Counted from the first letter of the stretch, positions 3,901 to 63,932 are shown. The stretch: DNA of 64,000 nucleotides from Phaeosaccion multiseriatum (GCA_965112735.1 OZ218960.1:2666001-2730000), one strand, 5' to 3'. Numbers and translations are program-made. Notes: generated by a model not told the origin, from the letters alone.

Positions 3901-6900
3901 GAGGGAGTGAGTGAGTGAGTGAGTGAGTGAGTGTGAGCGCGTAAGTGAGGGAGTGAGGGAGTAGTACGTATCTTACCATTCTACCTCCCTTTCACCTCCC
4001 TCCCTCCCCAGGCCTCCACCCCATCCCACCCCTCACCCCCCCCCCCCCCCGCCCCCTCGTATCACCAACTGCCTGCGGCCCCTCCTCCTCAATAAACAAG
4101 GCCCTCGTGGTGCTACAGATGGCGTCGACTGGAGAGTACTTGCTCAAAAGGTGGGGGGCTTCGCGACCGTGGCCAAGGACTTCACCCCGACTTTCTTTCT
4201 CGAGCAGGACGATACAGACACTCAGGTTTGGTTCATACACTTTCGTAATTGTGCGTTGTGCATGTTGCTTTTTCAATCAGCCGGTGAAGTGGTCGTTCAA
4301 CTGGTCGCTAAGTACCGTTAATGCAAGACGATGCGATGTGCGACGTTAACCCCCTTTCCCCTTGAGTGGTGTTCAGAGTGAGGTGCCTGGGGTGTCCTCC
4401 TCTTCTCCGCCTCCTGTCCATCCACTGCCATCCCTCCCTTTCGTTCAGCTCACCCTCTGTCTTTCTTCCTGTGTCACTCCCTCCCTCCCTGCTCCTCCTC
4501 CTCCCCCTCCTCCTCCTCCAATCCCATCCACCCACCGCCATCCTCCAATCCCATCCACTACCATCCATCCTCCTGTCCGTGCTCTTGTCCTCAAGGTGGA
4601 CGTATGGCGGGACCGGAGCACCAAGCGCTTGGTCATTAGCTTCAGGGGCACCGAATCGGTGAGTGAGTGACTTCCTTCGTCGTCGTTCCTTCCCGACCCT
4701 AGGGGGAAGTCCTCTTCGATGGTTCTGACCTCCTCTCACCACCACTACCGTCTTCATCTCGGTATGTATGCCTTTGTCTCCTCTCCCTCTATTCATGTCG
4801 TTGTACGATCTTGGTCTCCTCTCCTCCGCCTCTACGCATACACAGATCAAATGGAGGGACTTTGTCACCGACGCCAATTTCCTGCAAGTGCCCTACGATG
4901 ATGAAGAAGGGGCTGTCTTCTCCGATAAGATCAAGAGCAAGGTGGAGAGCGCCAAGAGGCAGGTGGGGGGGGGGGGCGGCAAGAAGGAGAGGAGGGGCCT
5001 CAGTGCGCTACTACCCAGACTCCTCCCTGGTCGCAGACGTAGGCGAGAGGACGAGGAGGCAGCAGCCGCAGCAGAAGAAGCAGCAGCAGTAGCAGCAGCA
5101 GCAGCATCAGCAACAGAGGCGGCGGCGGCACGAGCAGTGGCAGAGGAGGCGGCAGTGGGGGGGATTACAGATCAGGCGAGTTGGTGATACAGAGGGAGGG
5201 AGGGAGGGAGGGAGGGAGGTAGGCAGAGGAAGGGCCAAAGATTTGTGTAAGAGTGGTTTACTTGTTGAGGTTGGTCCTGACACTTATCATCCATCCCTCC
5301 CACCCCCCATGCCCTCAACCCACACTACTTGCCGCGCCTCTGCGTCGCCTGACACCATGCACTAGGACCCCCCTCTGTGTGTGTATGTGTGTCTCTCTCT
5401 CTGGCGCTCTCTTGCCGGCTATCTCTCTCTCTTATCTCTTTCTCTCCATCCCACTCTCACACCCTCTCTCTCTCTCCCTCCCTTGCCTCTCCGACTCTCT
5501 CTCCCTCCCTCTCCCTGCTCATTTGCTGCCTCTCTTGTATTCACAGATGGCGGAGGTACTAACGGGTCTGGAGAAACTTCGCTCTGACATTCCTGCATCC
5601 GTCCGAGAGGGACTTGCCGTGGTGCCTGGTGTCACTCAGGTAAATGTACACACACAGTACGTAGCATTACGTAACATGTCGTCATTAAATGGAATGATTC
5701 GTGAGTATGAGGGTCACGGTCAGAGGGCGAGGGGTGGAGCGGAGCTTTTGAGGTATATATATTGGGGTGGAAAGGGGCTTTTGAGGTATATGTATATAAA
5801 AAAAAGGGGTGGAGCGGAGCTTTTGACGTAGGGGTGGAGTGGGAGTGGAGAGGAGTAGAGAGTGAGGGTGGAGTGGAGTGGAGAGGGCAAGGGTCAGGGT
5901 CAGGGTCAGGGTCAGGGTCTGAGTCGGGGTCACCTTCCTCCCTTTGCCCTATCAAGCGGCTGCCCCCGTGTGTAGATGGAGAGCACGCACTCCTCTCCTT
6001 TGCCTTGTCCACCGCTCTAATGGCATGCTTCTTGCCCATCTCCATCGCTCCTTTGCTGTTTTGACGCTCTGGGGACGGATTTTGCATGTGTTATGTGTTT
6101 TTTTTTGTGTGTGTGTGTATGTGTGTGTGTGCGTATGTGTGTGTCTGCAGTCGCTGAACCAAATTTCCTCCAACCTGGACGTGCTCAAAAGAGTGGCACT
6201 CACCGCGTCGACAACGGATGAGGAGGATGGGGAGGAGAGGGAGAAGGAGGAGGAAGAGGAGGGGGAGGAAGAGGGGGGGGCTTCGGTGGGTGGAAGAGGA
6301 GAGGAGGGAGGAGGAGGAGATGAAGGAGGAGGAGGAGGAGGAGGAGACGGAGGAGAAGAAGGAGAGTCATGGGACACCAAGGCAGTAGGAAGCAAGAGGA
6401 TCAAGAGCAGCAGCAGCAACAGCAGGGACGAGAAGGCAGAGAGGAAGCGACTACAGAGCTTGCGCCTCTCCGCTCAGGTCAAGCAACGCGAGGAGCAACA
6501 GAAGAACGTTCTCGGAGACTGGGCTGGGCTCATTCAGGTGATTGAAGAGAGAGAGAGAGGAGCGAGTGATCCGTCTTTCACTCACACCCTCAAACACGCA
6601 CTCCCTCACTCCCTCTTGTCCCTCACTCTCTCTCTCACTGGCACTCATTCACTCATTCACTCACTCACCCTCTCTCTCTCTCTCCCTTCCTCCCTCCCTC
6701 CCTCTCTCCCTCCCTCCCTCCCCCCCTCCCTCCCTCCCTCTCTCCCTCCCTCTCCCTCCCCTCCCTCCCTCCCTTCCCTCCCTCCCTCCCTCCCTCCCTC
6801 CCCTCCCTCCCTCCCTCCCTCCCTCCCTCCCTCCCTCCCTCCCTCCCTCCCTCCCTCCCTCCCTCCCTCCCTCTCCCTCTCTCAGGAGTCTCTGGCCAGC

Positions 6901-61900: not shown

Positions 61901-63932
61901 GGCGTATCACCAAGTGCTGTATCACCAACTGCTGCTGCATCACCAACTGCTGTATCACCAACTGCTGCTGCAGCTGCTAATGCGAGCAGTCCAGGAGAAG
62001 ACAGCGTAGCATTATCGCTAGCGGCGCCATCGGAGGCAGCGGGGATGGCAGTGGAGGGCGGTGGTGGAGGAGAGGGAGGAGGAGGAGGAGGAGGAGGAGG
62101 AGGAGGAGGAGGAGGAGAAGGAGGAGGAGGAGGAGGAGGAGGAGGAGGAGGGGGAGGAGCGAGCCTAGCAGGCACTGACTTGTCTCCCATACACTCCTTC
62201 ACGGTCAATGCCATTGTACCCACGGGGAGAGACAGGCGCCCCACGCTGCGTTACGGGGAGGATGAGAATGCTCGTTGTGCTTGGTCCTCGCCTCTTCGAA
62301 GAAGGTCCGAGGTAAGCGCTGGTCCTTCCTCGCGGCCAGTAGGTGGTAGCGAGGAGGACGAGGAGGAGGAGGAGGAGAAGGAGGAGGAGGAGGAGGAGGA
62401 GGAGGAGGAGGAGGAGGAGGAAGAGGAGGACGATGACGACGACGAGGAGGATGAGGATGAGGATGAGGATGAGGATGCTGCTGCGGAGGCAGCGCTTGCG
62501 TTACTGGTGCTGCAGGAGAAGGAGGAGGCGAGGATGGCAGTGGAGGGTCAGGGAGGAGGCGGGGTGGGGGTGGGGATGGCAGTGGAAGTTGCTTCGCGGG
62601 CACGTCTCACGGGGCGAAGGAATACGCTCTTTAATCAGGTGCGGTTGTACGGTTGTGCGGTGGTGCGGTGGTGGTGTGGGTGGTGCTCAGTTTTAGTTTC
62701 AGTTTAGTTATTGATTCGAGGATCAGTATCCGTTCTAGGTTCTTGGAGGGCCCGGGGGGGAGAAGGGCAGGAGGGGGCGATGGTGCTCCTCTTCTCTCGT
62801 CGTCGTCGTCAGCTGTGCTCTCTCCTCACCGCAAGTACTTGTGTACGTCTGCTGAATGCCCCCCGCCTCGACGCTTCCTCTTGACGCACGCACACACGCA
62901 CGCACACACACACGCATACACACACACACGCACACACGCATATACACGTACATACCACCGATGTTTCTATTCTACAGCTGACCGAGGAGGACGGGGGAGA
63001 CAAAGGCACGAAGGGGGGCAGGCGGCTTCGAACTGCTCCTGTTGGTGATACAAGAAGAAGGCGAGGCAGCACGGGGGGGCTTCTCGAAGCACGCGGCACA
63101 CCCCCTGCGAGTGCCGCTGAGGCAGCCGAAGGTACGATGCAGTTGGTGATACAGGTGGTGATACAGTTGTTGGTGCAGTTGTTGGTGCAGTGGGGATTCA
63201 TCGTGGTGGTGAATGAGAAGCTCCATACAACACCTGGCAAAGTGTTCCGAGGGTTGGCACGACAAGTCTGCATAGTACGTACCCCCACACCTCCCTCCCT
63301 CCCTCCCTCCCTCCCTCCCTCCCTCCCTCCCTCCCTCCCTCCCTCCCTCCCTCCCTCCCTCCCTCCCTCCCTCCCTCCCTCCCTCCCTCCCTCCCTCCCT
63401 CCCTCCCTCCCTCCCTCCCTCCCTCCCTCCCTCCCTCCCTCCCTCCCTCCCTCCCTCCCTCCCTCCCTCCCTCCCTCCCTCCCTCCCTCCCTCCCTCCCT
63501 CCCTCCCTCCCTCCCTCCCTCCCTCCCTCCCTCCCTCCCTCCCTCCCTCCCTCCCTCCCTCCCTCCCTCCCTCCCTTCATTGGCCCACCAGTTCTACAAG
63601 CCTTGGCAGCACGGCGAGGCAGCAGCAGGCCTCCCTTCGGCTCTCGGCCTCGGCCATCATCACAACCTCCCCTCGACTCAAAGTACGACCCATTCTATGT
63701 CACCGTCAAGGCGGTGAAGCAGTATATACCCAACGAAGGCCTTCCCCCTTGGAAGGTCGGAGTGCTGGACGGAGGCTGGCGACAGATCTCCAACTACCTC
63801 GAGAACAGGGTGGATTCGACTTGGAGGAGGAGGAAGAGGAAGAGGAGGAGGCGAGAGAAGAGGGAGCAGGAGTTGATGACACATCAGCAAGAGGCAGCGT
63901 CGTCAGAATCACGTGAGTGTGCGAGAGAGTGA
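52969..63932 (+). CDS. Large multi-exon uncharacterised protein with a conserved-looking N-terminal domain and long low-complexity regions (may be two genes)
   Basis: Spliced exons give YKLQADPEMNTLANLRRRQSLKHS...AEEFW, YKQLSIKIHLAL...AAVDWLRD...MTFQ|TLKNSLYELADIWTENIDEVEYAAFL. Further exons at about 55855, 56122, 56918, 57342, 58370, 58795-62638, 62978 and 63591-63932. There is a frame switch near 60250. Confidence 0.6.
63290..63575 (+). repeat. Intronic (CCCT)n microsatellite
   Basis: Pure run before the acceptor at about 63590. Confidence 0.95.

What the first reader, a model, noticed from the sequence alone, without database searches (positions are those of the whole stretch)
4059..63152. 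A DUS/HIP1-like dispersed word (CAGTTGGTGATACAGC) written through introns and protein-coding exons on both strands
Seen in sequence: about 37 exact copies of the 10-mer core in 64 kb, against roughly 0.1 expected for a random 10-mer on two strands, plus many 1-mismatch variants. It lies in introns (4059, 5181, 8595, 14210, 18604, 24793, 50865, 63143), intergenic DNA (30475) and exons of several unrelated genes. Within the single CAP-Gly ORF it is read three ways: AVSPTA (33138, reverse orientation), QLVIQQ (34665) and AVGDTA (34870). It is therefore a nucleic-acid-level word imprinted on proteins, not a peptide motif. It is not a simple microsatellite, but is usually embedded in (CAG/GCA)n runs and sometimes forms short tandems (33455-33480, 61866-61964). 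Established: frame-independent over-represented words exist in bacteria (DUS/USS, Chi, HIP1). Inference: this may be an undescribed eukaryotic system that inserts or favours the word, for example templated addition at CAG tracts by a telomerase/RT-like activity, biased repair or gene conversion, or a genome-wide binding site for chromatin, replication or recombination.
Basis: partly seen in the sequence, partly recalled or inferred. Interest (0 to 1): 0.9.

Follow-up and report, generated by a model that had tools for sequence, protein, structure and literature searches.

The report
Genome-wide 12-base word in CAG tracts
A specific 12-base DNA word (GTTGGTGATACA) is scattered about once per kilobase through this alga-like genome, mostly inside short CAG/GCA runs and often inside protein-coding sequence in several reading frames. 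It behaves like a tiny self-copying, frame-preserving filler rather than a peptide motif, a transposon or an artefact.

Summary
GTTGGTGATACA occurs 29 times exactly, 22 times with one mismatch and 22 times with two in 64 kb. About 2.5 matches with up to two mismatches are expected by chance. It is the only dispersed non-simple word in the window. Contigs from five public runs, covering two samples and two studies, reproduce it, and about 1,900 foreign contigs pile onto its copies. First readers noted the same word in at least ten other windows of this genome, so this scan found it before on other DNA.

Anatomy: the word has a fixed orientation relative to flanking GCA units. It is 12 nt long, and tandem periods are 12+3n. 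It is stop-free in five of six frames. In long ORFs it is read as AVSPT, QLVIQ or VGDT, and never in the frame that contains TGA. No sequence is shared beyond the word plus simple-repeat flanks. There are no inverted terminal repeats and no target-site duplication.

Copies cluster in low-complexity ORFs, are absent from 14.5 kb holding three genes, and decay mainly by transitions and non-synonymous changes.

Best reading (0.4): a neutral or selfish cassette copied from existing copies during repair at simple repeats, with selection filtering where it can persist. RNA-templated addition (0.2) and a selected binding site (0.12) remain open. No RNA data or relatives were available.

The parts
4058..4069 (-). 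One-mismatch copy (last base G), followed on its own strand by a G-rich run. It lies outside any long ORF.
5180..5191 (+). Exact copy that directly abuts the start of an (AGGG)n array at 5193. An upstream ORF runs into the word and stops at its TGA.
8594..8697 (-). Loose cluster of three copies: 8594 (1 mismatch), 8651 (2 mismatches) and 8686 (1 mismatch).
10752..10763 (+). Solitary exact copy with only CAG on each side.
13155..13184 (-). Two one-mismatch copies 18 nt apart inside a poly-Q ORF, read as QQLVIQQ and QQLAIQL.
14209..14220 (+). Exact copy 1 nt before an (AGGG)n array at 14222.
18603..18614 (+). One-mismatch copy followed by a (GCACA)n run, just beyond the 3' end of the PX-domain ORF on the opposite strand.
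20569..20580 (-). One-mismatch copy inside the PX-domain ORF, read as GGDT.
24619..24803 (.). Inverted pair with unrelated sequence between the copies. 24619 (+) has 1 mismatch and 24792 (-) is exact. The exact copy sits a few bases after a GTGAGG and directly before an AGGG-like array.
30474..30485 (+). Solitary exact copy upstream of the CAP-Gly ORF.
32241..36358. Densest cluster, all inside one open frame of 2,025 codons (ORF listing gives an ORF of 2,001 aa; CAP-Gly domain at residues 134-189 of that ORF). Exact copies: 32321-, 33140-, 33467-, 33872-, 34043-, 34202-, 34667+, 34872+, 35004+, 35381+. One-mismatch copies: 32241+, 33024+, 33605+, 36123+, 36147+, 36347+. There are also nine two-mismatch copies. 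Minus copies read AVSPT. Plus copies read QLVIQ or VGDT.
50864..50893 (+). An exact copy and a one-mismatch copy 18 nt apart.
53628..53639 (+). Solitary exact copy.
56284..57577 (.). Three copies: 56284+ (1 mismatch), 57407+ (exact, read PQLVIQQ) and 57566- (exact, read GVSPT). The last two lie in a 267-codon ORF.
59082..60495 (.). Five copies inside acidic/Gly-rich low-complexity ORFs: 59082- (1 mismatch), 59205- (exact), 60181+ (exact), 60202+ (1 mismatch) and 60484- (exact, with a 2-mismatch neighbour 15 nt away).
61180..61962 (.). Cluster in the 834-codon ORF. Exact copies: 61180-, 61654+, 61867-, 61918-, 61951-. One-mismatch copies: 61330-, 61549-, 61936-. The array at 61903-61962 has periods of 15 and 18 nt. 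Translated, it gives repeated AVSPTA.
63041..63190 (+). 63041 is exact. From 63142 there is an exact copy followed by a period-12 series of decaying units, each ending in CAG. The series begins 9 nt after a GT that follows GAAG.

Best explanation
The word is a real, DNA-level, genome-wide repeat of 12 nt. It can be written GTTGGTGATACA, or equivalently as the unit TTGGTGATACAG. It lives in and next to GCA/CAG tracts, in one fixed orientation relative to the CAG strand.

Proposed mechanism (inferred, not shown): simple repeats such as (CAG)n and (AGGG)n stall replication and break. The broken end, which itself ends in CAG-like sequence, primes on another tract that already carries the word. This could be ectopic gene conversion, synthesis-dependent strand annealing, or template switching using the GCA units as homology or microhomology. 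The end copies the word and rejoins through the GCA units on the far side. Each event adds 12+3n bases.

Selection then acts only as a filter. The cassette is four codons long and has no stop in five of six frames. It is therefore tolerated in disordered poly-Q and poly-Ala segments of proteins. It is lost where it would be read in the Ser frame (TGA), or where it would sit in folded domains. After insertion the copies decay by ordinary point mutation.

On this reading the word has no function of its own. It is a neutral or selfish passenger of repeat-tract repair.
For: Shown:
1. Over-representation by about 30-fold for matches with up to two mismatches, and by at least 500-fold for exact copies (Markov models of order 1-4). 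It is the only such word in the window.
2. Fixed orientation and periodic GCA flanks on both sides. TTGGTGATA and its variants are the main multi-codon interruption of CAG runs.
3. No similarity between loci beyond the word plus simple-repeat flanks (30-88 nt). No inverted terminal repeats. Sequences between inverted pairs are unrelated. Flanking triplets do not co-vary, so there is no target-site duplication.
4. Tandem clusters have periods of 12, 15, 18, 21 and 24, that is the word plus 0 to 4 GCA units.
5. Two-word modules with the same variants recur at different loci: 33595-33674 against 36113-36192, and 13122-13192 against 34882-34952 on the opposite strand. This points to copying from existing genomic copies rather than from one fixed template.
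6. Copies cluster by gene. Thirteen to 14 copies per 4 kb occur in two low-complexity regions. None occur in 14.5 kb holding the PPR, ankyrin and 812-aa ORFs, although GCA/GCT hexamers are present there.
7. Frame filter. In long ORFs the minus orientation is almost always read in the Ala frame (AVSPT and its variants). The plus orientation is split between the Q and Ala frames. The four poly-Ser (AGC) runs of the CAP-Gly ORF carry no copy.
8. Decay pattern. The counts are 29: 22: 22. One-mismatch variants show 14 transitions to 8 transversions, and most changes within ORFs are non-synonymous.
9. Two to three copies lie exactly at the 5' edge of (AGGG)n arrays, against 0.04 expected. This fits break-prone repeats as insertion points.
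10. Genome-wide spread. About 1,900 contigs pile up on a 6-kb stretch. Summed depth at word sites is tens to hundreds of times the single-copy depth in all four runs laid, from two studies.
Against: - No insertion event was caught. There was no presence/absence difference between the two samples over about 22 copies, and no orthologue from a relative could be found.
- Many copies have only 3-6 nt of GCA-like flank. That is little homology for conversion, so tens of thousands of copies would need a marked gain bias. No such bias is demonstrated.
- The idea that the word stabilises CAG hairpins got little support. A central copy changes the predicted DNA hairpin energy by only 1.7 kcal/mol.
- Clustering by gene could also reflect local tandem duplication.
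- The shared variants in two-word modules are few and could be coincidence.
- Why this one sequence, and no second word, is explained only by a founder effect.
Confidence: 0.4

Rival explanations
1. RNA-templated addition. One version is a reverse transcriptase with a short internal template, in the manner of telomerase, that aligns on a CAG 3' end and writes TTGGTGATACAG. The other version is a CAG-tract-specific non-LTR retrotransposon. Its 3' end would be the word followed by a (GCA)n tail, and nearly all of its insertions would be cut back to that end.
For: - The unit begins and ends with CAG, a 12-nt unit with 3-nt terminal redundancy, as expected for an align-copy-realign cycle. A period-12 series exists at 63142-63190.
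- The high copy number and independent flanks call for an efficient writer.
- Precedents exist. Telomerase has inserted telomeric repeats at internal break sites (PMC8537989), and templated sequence insertions from distant loci are known (PMC5110952).
Against: - The window holds no RT gene, no longer element and no candidate small-RNA gene with the word. Rfam and tRNA scans were empty.
- Conservation falls off symmetrically on both sides of the centre TTGGTGAT, not as a ladder of 5' truncations.
- GCA flanks are equally strong on both sides, so there is no tail asymmetry.
- The commonest tandem periods are 15 and 18, not 12.
- Variant modules shared between loci argue for copying from genomic DNA.
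- Gene-wise clustering is not expected from a diffusible writer.
Confidence: 0.2
2. A functional genomic signal: a binding site for a chromatin, replication, recombination or repeat-tract-binding protein, kept abundant by selection. It would be analogous in logic to DUS/USS, Chi or HIP1.
For: - Extreme over-representation on both strands and in several frames.
- Exact copies outnumber each mismatch class.
- The density of about 0.5 to 0.8 per kb is similar to that of bacterial signal words. HIP1 is likewise hyper-abundant with its function still debated (PMC5861425).
Against: - Copies are confined to low-complexity sequence and absent from 14.5 kb with three genes (P about 1e-5 under uniform spread).
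- They occur up to 14 per 4 kb within single ORFs, far denser than any spacing-based signal needs.
- The 29: 22: 22 series and the transition-rich variants look like unconstrained decay.
- The word is not palindromic.
Confidence: 0.12
3. Splicing-related sequence. The word supplies a donor-like GTTGGT and an acceptor-like ACAG. It might mark, create or be left by introns, for example through intron birth next to microsatellites or as a remnant of an introner-like element.
For: - The word starts with GT and is followed by ...ACAG.
- Several copies outside ORFs sit where an upstream ORF ends, or a few bases after a canonical GTGAGG or GTACG. Some are immediately followed by long (AGGG)n arrays typical of the non-coding DNA here.
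Against: - About three quarters of copies lie inside long open frames, in both orientations. Removing them (13 nt from GT to AG) would break the frame, and the frames stay open only if the word is retained.
- No longer introner-like element is shared between loci.
- No RNA data exist to show any splice at a copy.
Confidence: 0.05
4. An ordinary protein-level repeat (AVSPTA or AVGDTA modules of disordered proteins) together with local coding minisatellites. On this view there is no DNA-level phenomenon.
For: - Degenerate peptide-like series such as AVGDTAA-AVADTAA-AVHDTTA occur at 34872-34919. Repeated AVSPTA occurs in the 834-codon ORF.
- S-P and T-P sites are common in disordered regions (general knowledge).
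Against: - The same 12-mer is read as three unrelated peptides within one ORF.
- It occurs on both strands, and in places where it meets a stop or lies outside ORFs.
- Variants are mostly non-synonymous.
- A search with the AVSPTA-rich segment found no related protein in 5.8 billion clusters.
Confidence: 0.04
5. Assembly, polishing or adapter artefact.
For: Nothing beyond the general suspicion that attaches to any hyper-abundant short word.
Against: - Contigs built independently from five runs of two samples and two studies contain the word at the same loci with no indels.
- The word matches no adapter sequence that I know of (from memory).
- Copies carry point variants and keep long ORFs open.
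Confidence: 0.02

Closest known systems
Bacterial over-represented words: DUS/USS uptake sequences, Chi, and cyanobacterial HIP1 (PMC5861425, PMC4390886)
   Same: A short exact word at roughly one per kb, on both strands, inside genes in several reading frames, and far above any compositional expectation.
   Different: Those words occur in bacteria and are spread through ordinary, conserved genes. They are tied to known machinery: uptake receptors, RecBCD, or methyltransferases for HIP1. HIP1 is a palindrome. This word is in an intron-bearing, microsatellite-rich eukaryote and is not palindromic. It is tied to GCA tracts, confined to low-complexity sequence and strongly clustered.
Variant-repeat interruptions of trinucleotide tracts (for example CAA or CAT in CAG tracts, AGG in CGG tracts; general knowledge)
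   Same: Non-CAG codons sit inside CAG/GCA runs, in frame, and are tolerated in poly-Q and poly-Ala.
   Different: Known interruptions are one-step mutations of the repeat unit and arise locus by locus. Here the same unrelated 9-12-nt string recurs at dozens of independent loci per 64 kb.
Interstitial telomeric sequences and templated sequence insertions at repaired breaks (PMC8537989, PMC5110952)
   Same: Short foreign strings written into internal chromosomal sites during break repair. The junctions show microhomology. There are no target-site duplications or transposon ends.
   Different: The word is not a telomere-type repeat. Candidate telomere repeats noted elsewhere in this genome by other readers are different, though this is unchecked. 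Copy number is far higher, and no template RNA is known.
Rickettsia palindromic elements: selfish DNA inserted in frame into protein-coding genes (from memory, Ogata et al. 2000; reviewed in PMC10969869)
   Same: A DNA-level repeat found inside ORFs of unrelated genes without breaking the frame. The proteins tolerate the added peptide segment.
   Different: RPEs are 100-150 bp palindromic MITE-like elements of bacteria. This unit is 12 nt and has no palindrome or terminal repeats.
Microsatellite-targeting non-LTR retrotransposons with repeat tails, and microsatellite families with shared flanks (from memory: R4/Dong-type, Waldo, 'mini-me')
   Same: A conserved sequence stands next to a simple repeat at many loci.
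   Different: Those families share tens to thousands of bases and show ladders of 5' truncation. Here, similarity ends at the 12-16-nt word on both sides.

Membership tests
DUS/USS-type uptake or signal word | Strong over-representation of an exact 9-12-mer on both strands, independent of reading frame | tested here: met
   29 exact copies against at most 0.06 expected. Three frames and both strands are used within single ORFs.
DUS/USS-type uptake or signal word | Even spread through the genome, including ordinary conserved genes | tested here: not met
   None in the PPR, ankyrin or 812-aa ORFs. There is a 14.5-kb gap (P about 1e-5). Copies are confined to low-complexity segments.
DUS/USS-type uptake or signal word | A cognate receptor or enzyme that recognises the word | not testable with these tools
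   No binding or uptake data. The host is a eukaryote: CAP-Gly, PX, ankyrin and PPR genes are present.
HIP1-type highly iterated palindrome | The word is its own reverse complement | tested here: not met
   The reverse complement of the word is TGTATCACCAAC, which differs from the word. Plus and minus copies are distinct and tied to the CAG or CTG strand respectively.
Transposable element, MITE or introner | Copies share sequence over the length of an element, with terminal inverted repeats | tested here: not met
   Self-BLAST finds only 30-88 nt of word plus simple repeat shared between loci. Sequences between inverted pairs are unrelated.
Transposable element, MITE or introner | Target-site duplication flanking each copy | tested here: not met
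   When the flanking triplets are not CAG they differ from each other: GAG/CAA, AAG/CAT, CCG/CAT, CTG/CAA.
Non-LTR retrotransposon 3' end with repeat tail | A ladder of 5'-truncated copies and a tail on the 3' side only | tested here: not met
   Sub-word counts fall symmetrically from the centre TTGGTGAT. GCA periodicity is equal on both sides.
Non-LTR retrotransposon 3' end with repeat tail | Full-length master copies encoding reverse transcriptase | not testable with these tools
   None in this window. The rest of the genome could not be read.
Microsatellite or minisatellite | Head-to-tail tandem arrays of one unit | tested here: inconclusive
   Fifteen clusters of 2 to 5 copies with periods of 12 to 24 nt. 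Most exact copies are solitary, and loci are unrelated outside the word.
Protein-level peptide repeat | One reading frame, with variants biased to synonymous changes | tested here: not met
   The AVSPT, QLVIQ and VGDT readings are all frequent. About 10 of 14 one-mismatch variants in ORFs change the amino acid (worked out).
Interstitial telomere-like insertion | The word equals the organism's telomere repeat or the telomerase template | not testable with these tools
   There is no telomere in the window. Other readers' unchecked notes propose different repeats for this genome.

The most novel reading that the evidence does not exclude
This eukaryote runs an active, dedicated writing process that inserts a 12-nt word, frame-neutral and stop-free in five of six frames, tens of thousands of times, including into exons. 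The process could be a short-template reverse transcriptase, or a repair pathway with a strong gain bias. The word would then be the smallest self-propagating DNA unit known. It would also be a systematic source of new peptide segments (AVSPT, QLVIQ, VGDT) in disordered proteins, and perhaps of splice donors next to microsatellites.
Probability: 0.25. Interest if true: 0.85.

Novelty: new variant of a known kind. Interest (0 to 1): 0.66.

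Why it matters
Hyper-abundant exact words are a classic puzzle in bacteria (DUS/USS, Chi, HIP1). They are not a described feature of eukaryotic nuclear genomes.

Here a 12-mer at about one copy per kb is written into coding sequence of unrelated genes in three frames. No transposon surrounds it.

If it spreads by repair-templated copying between simple repeats, it shows three things:
- Microsatellite tracts can act as a genome-wide homology network.
- Selfish sequences can shrink to four codons.
- Low-complexity protein segments can be shaped by DNA-level drive rather than by selection on the protein.

If a dedicated writer exists, it would be a new kind of mobile system.

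In practice the word also matters for annotation. It creates false similarity between proteins, breaks short-read assemblies at every copy, and may affect splice-site prediction.

Tried and rejected
1. Public collections. At most two cores occurred per locus. The 20-mer with CAG flanks has no match in viral contigs.

2. Relatives. Homology searches with the CAP-Gly ORF found only animal CAP-Gly domains. The PPR-SMR ORF gave generic PPR proteins at 49% identity or less, with no self hit. The AVSPTA-rich segment gave nothing. The exhaustive representative search found only CAP-Gly domain matches, and the best hit is an eight-domain CAP-Gly protein on a 2.7-kb contig. An exact look-up of the 812-aa ORF found no record. 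The genome and its close relatives are therefore not in the protein collections, and insertion against orthologues could not be tested. The organism was not identified. An atlas search gave only sorting-nexin-like PX clusters.

3. RNA evidence. No RNA run holds the locus, and the runs found look like DNA, with contigs up to 254 kb. Retention in mRNA and the exon/intron labels remain unverified.

4. MITE idea, from plus/minus pairs 80-300 nt apart. The internal sequences are unrelated.

5. Target-site duplication or excision-footprint idea. The flanking triplets do not co-vary.

6. tRNA primer-binding-site idea. TGGTGATACAG could pair with a tRNA 3' end. However, there is no tRNA in the window, the conservation centre is not where a PBS would put it, and the supposed T-arm region is CAG repeat.

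7. U6 snRNA resemblance (TTGG..GATACAG, recalled from memory). A permissive Rfam scan over a word-rich stretch gave no U6 match, only chance hairpins far below threshold.

8. 'Stabilising interruption' idea. Predicted DNA hairpin energies of CAG tracts change by only 1.7 kcal/mol with a central copy.

9. Codon-aligned hypervariability of the GGT triplet. There is a slight excess, but the numbers are too small to use.

10. Orientation against local GC or purine skew. Only a weak trend, with 36 of 51 copies positive downstream.

11. Literature. No paper in the library contains the 12-mer in a relevant context. A keyword search for a comparable eukaryotic phenomenon found nothing.

Full report

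Yes.
- The 16-mer CAGTTGGTGATACAGC has 12 exact matches, with none expected in 100 dinucleotide-preserving shuffles.
- The 12-mer core GTTGGTGATACA has 29 exact, 22 one-mismatch and 22 two-mismatch matches. That is 73 in total against 2.5 +/- 1.4 expected.
- Markov backgrounds of order 1 to 4, trained on the window itself, predict 0.002 to 0.06 exact copies.

After periodic k-mers are removed, every top dispersed 11-mer of the window is a piece of this word. The next group belongs to the local 105-nt PPR array. The window is otherwise very rich in simple repeats, with 8.5% in perfect runs.

**2. Is it an artefact, and is it confined to this window?**

No on both counts. Logan contigs of four runs were laid on 30400-36390. 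X1, X2 and X4 come from one sample. X5 comes from another sample and another study.

The locus's own contigs cover word-bearing stretches with no or one mismatch and no indels. Examples are X5 records over 32117-32347, 33457-34013 and 35712-36142.

Between 976 and 1,917 contigs per run were laid on this 6-kb stretch, which its own contigs would tile with a few dozen records. A quarter to a half of the laid contigs fit it only in part. Summed depth in bins that contain the word plus CAG flanks is tens to hundreds of times the single-copy depth. Dozens of 'joints' link one word copy to another in all runs. These are contigs from other loci that share the word.

First readers independently noted the same letters (GTTGGTGATAC, AGTTGGTGATACAG, CTGTATCACCAAC) in at least ten other windows on other pieces of this genome. 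Those are unchecked AI notes, but they agree.

The runs look like DNA, with contigs up to 254 kb. No RNA run was found.

**3. Anatomy**

- Conservation peaks at TTGGTGAT and falls symmetrically on both sides.
- The flanks are periodic G-C-A on both sides for two to three units, at 60-80% per position. The layout is therefore (GCA)n GTT GGT GAT ACA (GCA)n, or equivalently CAG | TTGGTGATA | CAG.
- The word's orientation is fixed relative to the CAG strand. Minus copies sit in CTG/GCT context.
- TTGGTGATA and its variants are the dominant multi-codon interruption between CAG runs.
- Many copies have only one GCA unit on a side. Nine copies lie in an ORF that has a single CAG run of three or more units.
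- Tandem clusters have spacers of zero to four GCA units, giving periods of 12, 15, 18, 21 and 24.
- Two copies abut the first unit of an (AGGG)n array, and a third abuts an imperfect one. About 0.04 such cases are expected.

**4. What it is not**

- Self-BLAST of the window finds no similarity between word loci beyond 30-88 nt of word plus simple repeat.
- Plus/minus pairs 80-300 nt apart enclose unrelated sequence, so they are not MITEs.
- When the flanking triplets are not CAG they differ from each other, so there is no target-site duplication.
- There are no tRNA genes and no Rfam families in the window.
- A permissive Rfam scan of a word-rich stretch shows nothing relevant, which removes a recalled resemblance to U6.
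- No paper in the library contains the word in a relevant context.

**5. Relation to coding sequence**

About three quarters of copies lie in long open frames.
- One is an open frame of 2,025 codons with a CAP-Gly domain (ORF listing gives an ORF of 2,001 aa). Others are ORFs of 834, 498 and 265 aa at 57-63 kb (open frames of 836, 515 and 267 codons), a poly-Q ORF at 12.6-14 kb, and the PX-domain ORF.
- Within these frames, minus copies are almost always read in the Ala frame, as AVSPT or a variant. Plus copies are read as QLVIQ or VGDT in roughly equal numbers.
- The third plus frame contains TGA and is not used. The four poly-Ser (AGC) runs of the CAP-Gly ORF carry no copy, while 6 of 14 poly-Q and 5 of 9 poly-Ala (GCA) runs do.
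- Of 14 one-mismatch copies in ORFs, about ten change the amino acid.

So the word is a DNA-level entity. The proteins merely tolerate it in low-complexity segments.

It is absent from the CAP-Gly, PX, PPR and ankyrin domains. It is also absent from a 14.5-kb stretch with three genes, which has a Poisson probability of about 1e-5.

The labels 'exon' and 'intron' could not be tested without RNA. A 2,025-codon open frame is not chance, and in all five long ORFs the first codon position is the most G+C-rich.

**6. Dynamics**

The series 29: 22: 22 is nearly flat. One-mismatch variants show 14 transitions to 8 transversions.

This is what steady birth of exact copies followed by unconstrained point-mutation decay would give. 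A site under purifying selection should show a steeper fall, although bacterial uptake sequences also have many one-off copies (from memory).

Two pairs of loci share a compound of two variant words with the same spacing. The pairs are 33595-33674 against 36113-36192, and 13122-13192 against 34882-34952 on the other strand. This suggests that the copied template can be an existing genomic copy longer than one word.

No presence/absence difference was seen between the two samples over about 22 copies. Insertion is therefore not rampant on that timescale.

**7. Mechanism**

I commit, at 0.4, to repair-templated copying between simple-repeat tracts, with selection acting as a filter.
- Breaks occur at structure-prone repeats, (CAG)n and (AGGG)n.
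- The break is primed through GCA homology or microhomology on a tract that already carries the word.
- Twelve plus 3n bases are copied, and the end rejoins.

What is shown: the anatomy, the lack of any longer element, the frame filter, the clustering and the decay pattern.

What is inferred: the break, the template choice and a gain bias.

Weak points:
- The homology available at many copies is short.
- No insertion event was caught.
- The idea that the word stabilises the tract is poorly supported.

The main rival (0.2) is RNA-templated writing. This could be a short-template, telomerase-like RT, or a CAG-specific retroelement reduced to its 3' end. The CAG...CAG terminal redundancy and the sheer copy number favour it. 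Precedents are PMC8537989 and PMC5110952. Against it are the symmetric conservation profile, the symmetric flanks, the 15/18-nt periods and the gene-wise clustering.

A selected binding site (0.12) is disfavoured by the distribution. A splice-related role (0.05) cannot be the main story, because most copies must be retained to keep frames open. Even so, the GTTGGT start and the position of some non-ORF copies just after donor-like sequences deserve an RNA-seq check.

**8. Comparison with known systems**

The word looks like DUS/USS/HIP1 in statistics only. It fails the tests of even spread and, for HIP1, of palindromy.

It fails every structural test for a transposon, a MITE or a truncated LINE.

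It resembles variant interruptions of trinucleotide repeats, but those are locus-specific one-step mutations.

It resembles interstitial telomeric or templated insertions in lacking transposon features. It resembles Rickettsia palindromic elements in being selfish DNA tolerated in frame.

I therefore file it as a new variant of known kinds (hyper-abundant genomic word, or dispersed mini-repeat), not as a member of any named family.

**9. Limits**

- The organism is unidentified. It is a photosynthetic-looking eukaryote according to other readers' notes. Its PPR protein is at most 49% identical to stramenopile and dinoflagellate proteins.
- Its proteome and close relatives are absent from the collections searched.
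- Genome-wide numbers rest and on unchecked notes. At about 0.45 exact copies per kb and contig totals near 90-100 Mb, tens of thousands of copies would be expected. That figure is an extrapolation.

Noticed in passing
window 44784-45991 (-), ORF 44423-46306: A PPR-SMR gene whose PPR part is 11.5 near-identical 105-nt (35-aa) tandem repeats, 92% matching. The closest database proteins are only 38-49% identical.
   Followed up: partly
window 26902-27472, 63290-63576, 7548-7883, 9049-9370, 51529-51922: Very long, nearly perfect tetranucleotide arrays: (CCCT) x143, (CCTC) x72 at 100% match, (CCCT) x84, (TCTA) x80 and (CTCA) x98. In all, 8.5% of the window is perfect simple repeat.
   Followed up: partly
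window 5180-5215, 14209-14260, 24764-24803: Three copies of the word sit exactly at the 5' edge of (AGGG)n arrays, and 24792 lies a few bases after a canonical GTGAGG. The word's own GTTGGT could act as a splice donor in front of a microsatellite-filled intron. This is untested for lack of RNA data.
   Followed up: partly
window 63133-63190: A period-12 decay series, each unit ending in CAG: TTGGTGATACAG, GTGGTGATACAG, then TTGTTGGTGCAG twice. It starts 9 nt after GAAG|GTACG. This is the only clear 12-nt tandem form of the word in the window.
   Followed up: partly
window 33489 and 34480: The run from the second sample (X5) differs from the window at two single bases over the roughly 3 kb it covers (C>T and T>G). 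It is therefore a slightly different strain or haplotype, but it carries the same word copies.
   Followed up: no
window 39208-41649 (-): An 812-aa ATG-started ORF with no Pfam match and no exact record in the gene collection. It holds a GCT tract (41183-41289) but no copy of the word.
   Followed up: partly
window 32241-36358: Plus and minus copies with CAG/CTG flanks lie in the same presumed transcript, 80-300 nt apart. They could pair as 16-25-bp RNA duplexes if transcribed. The consequences are unknown.
   Followed up: no
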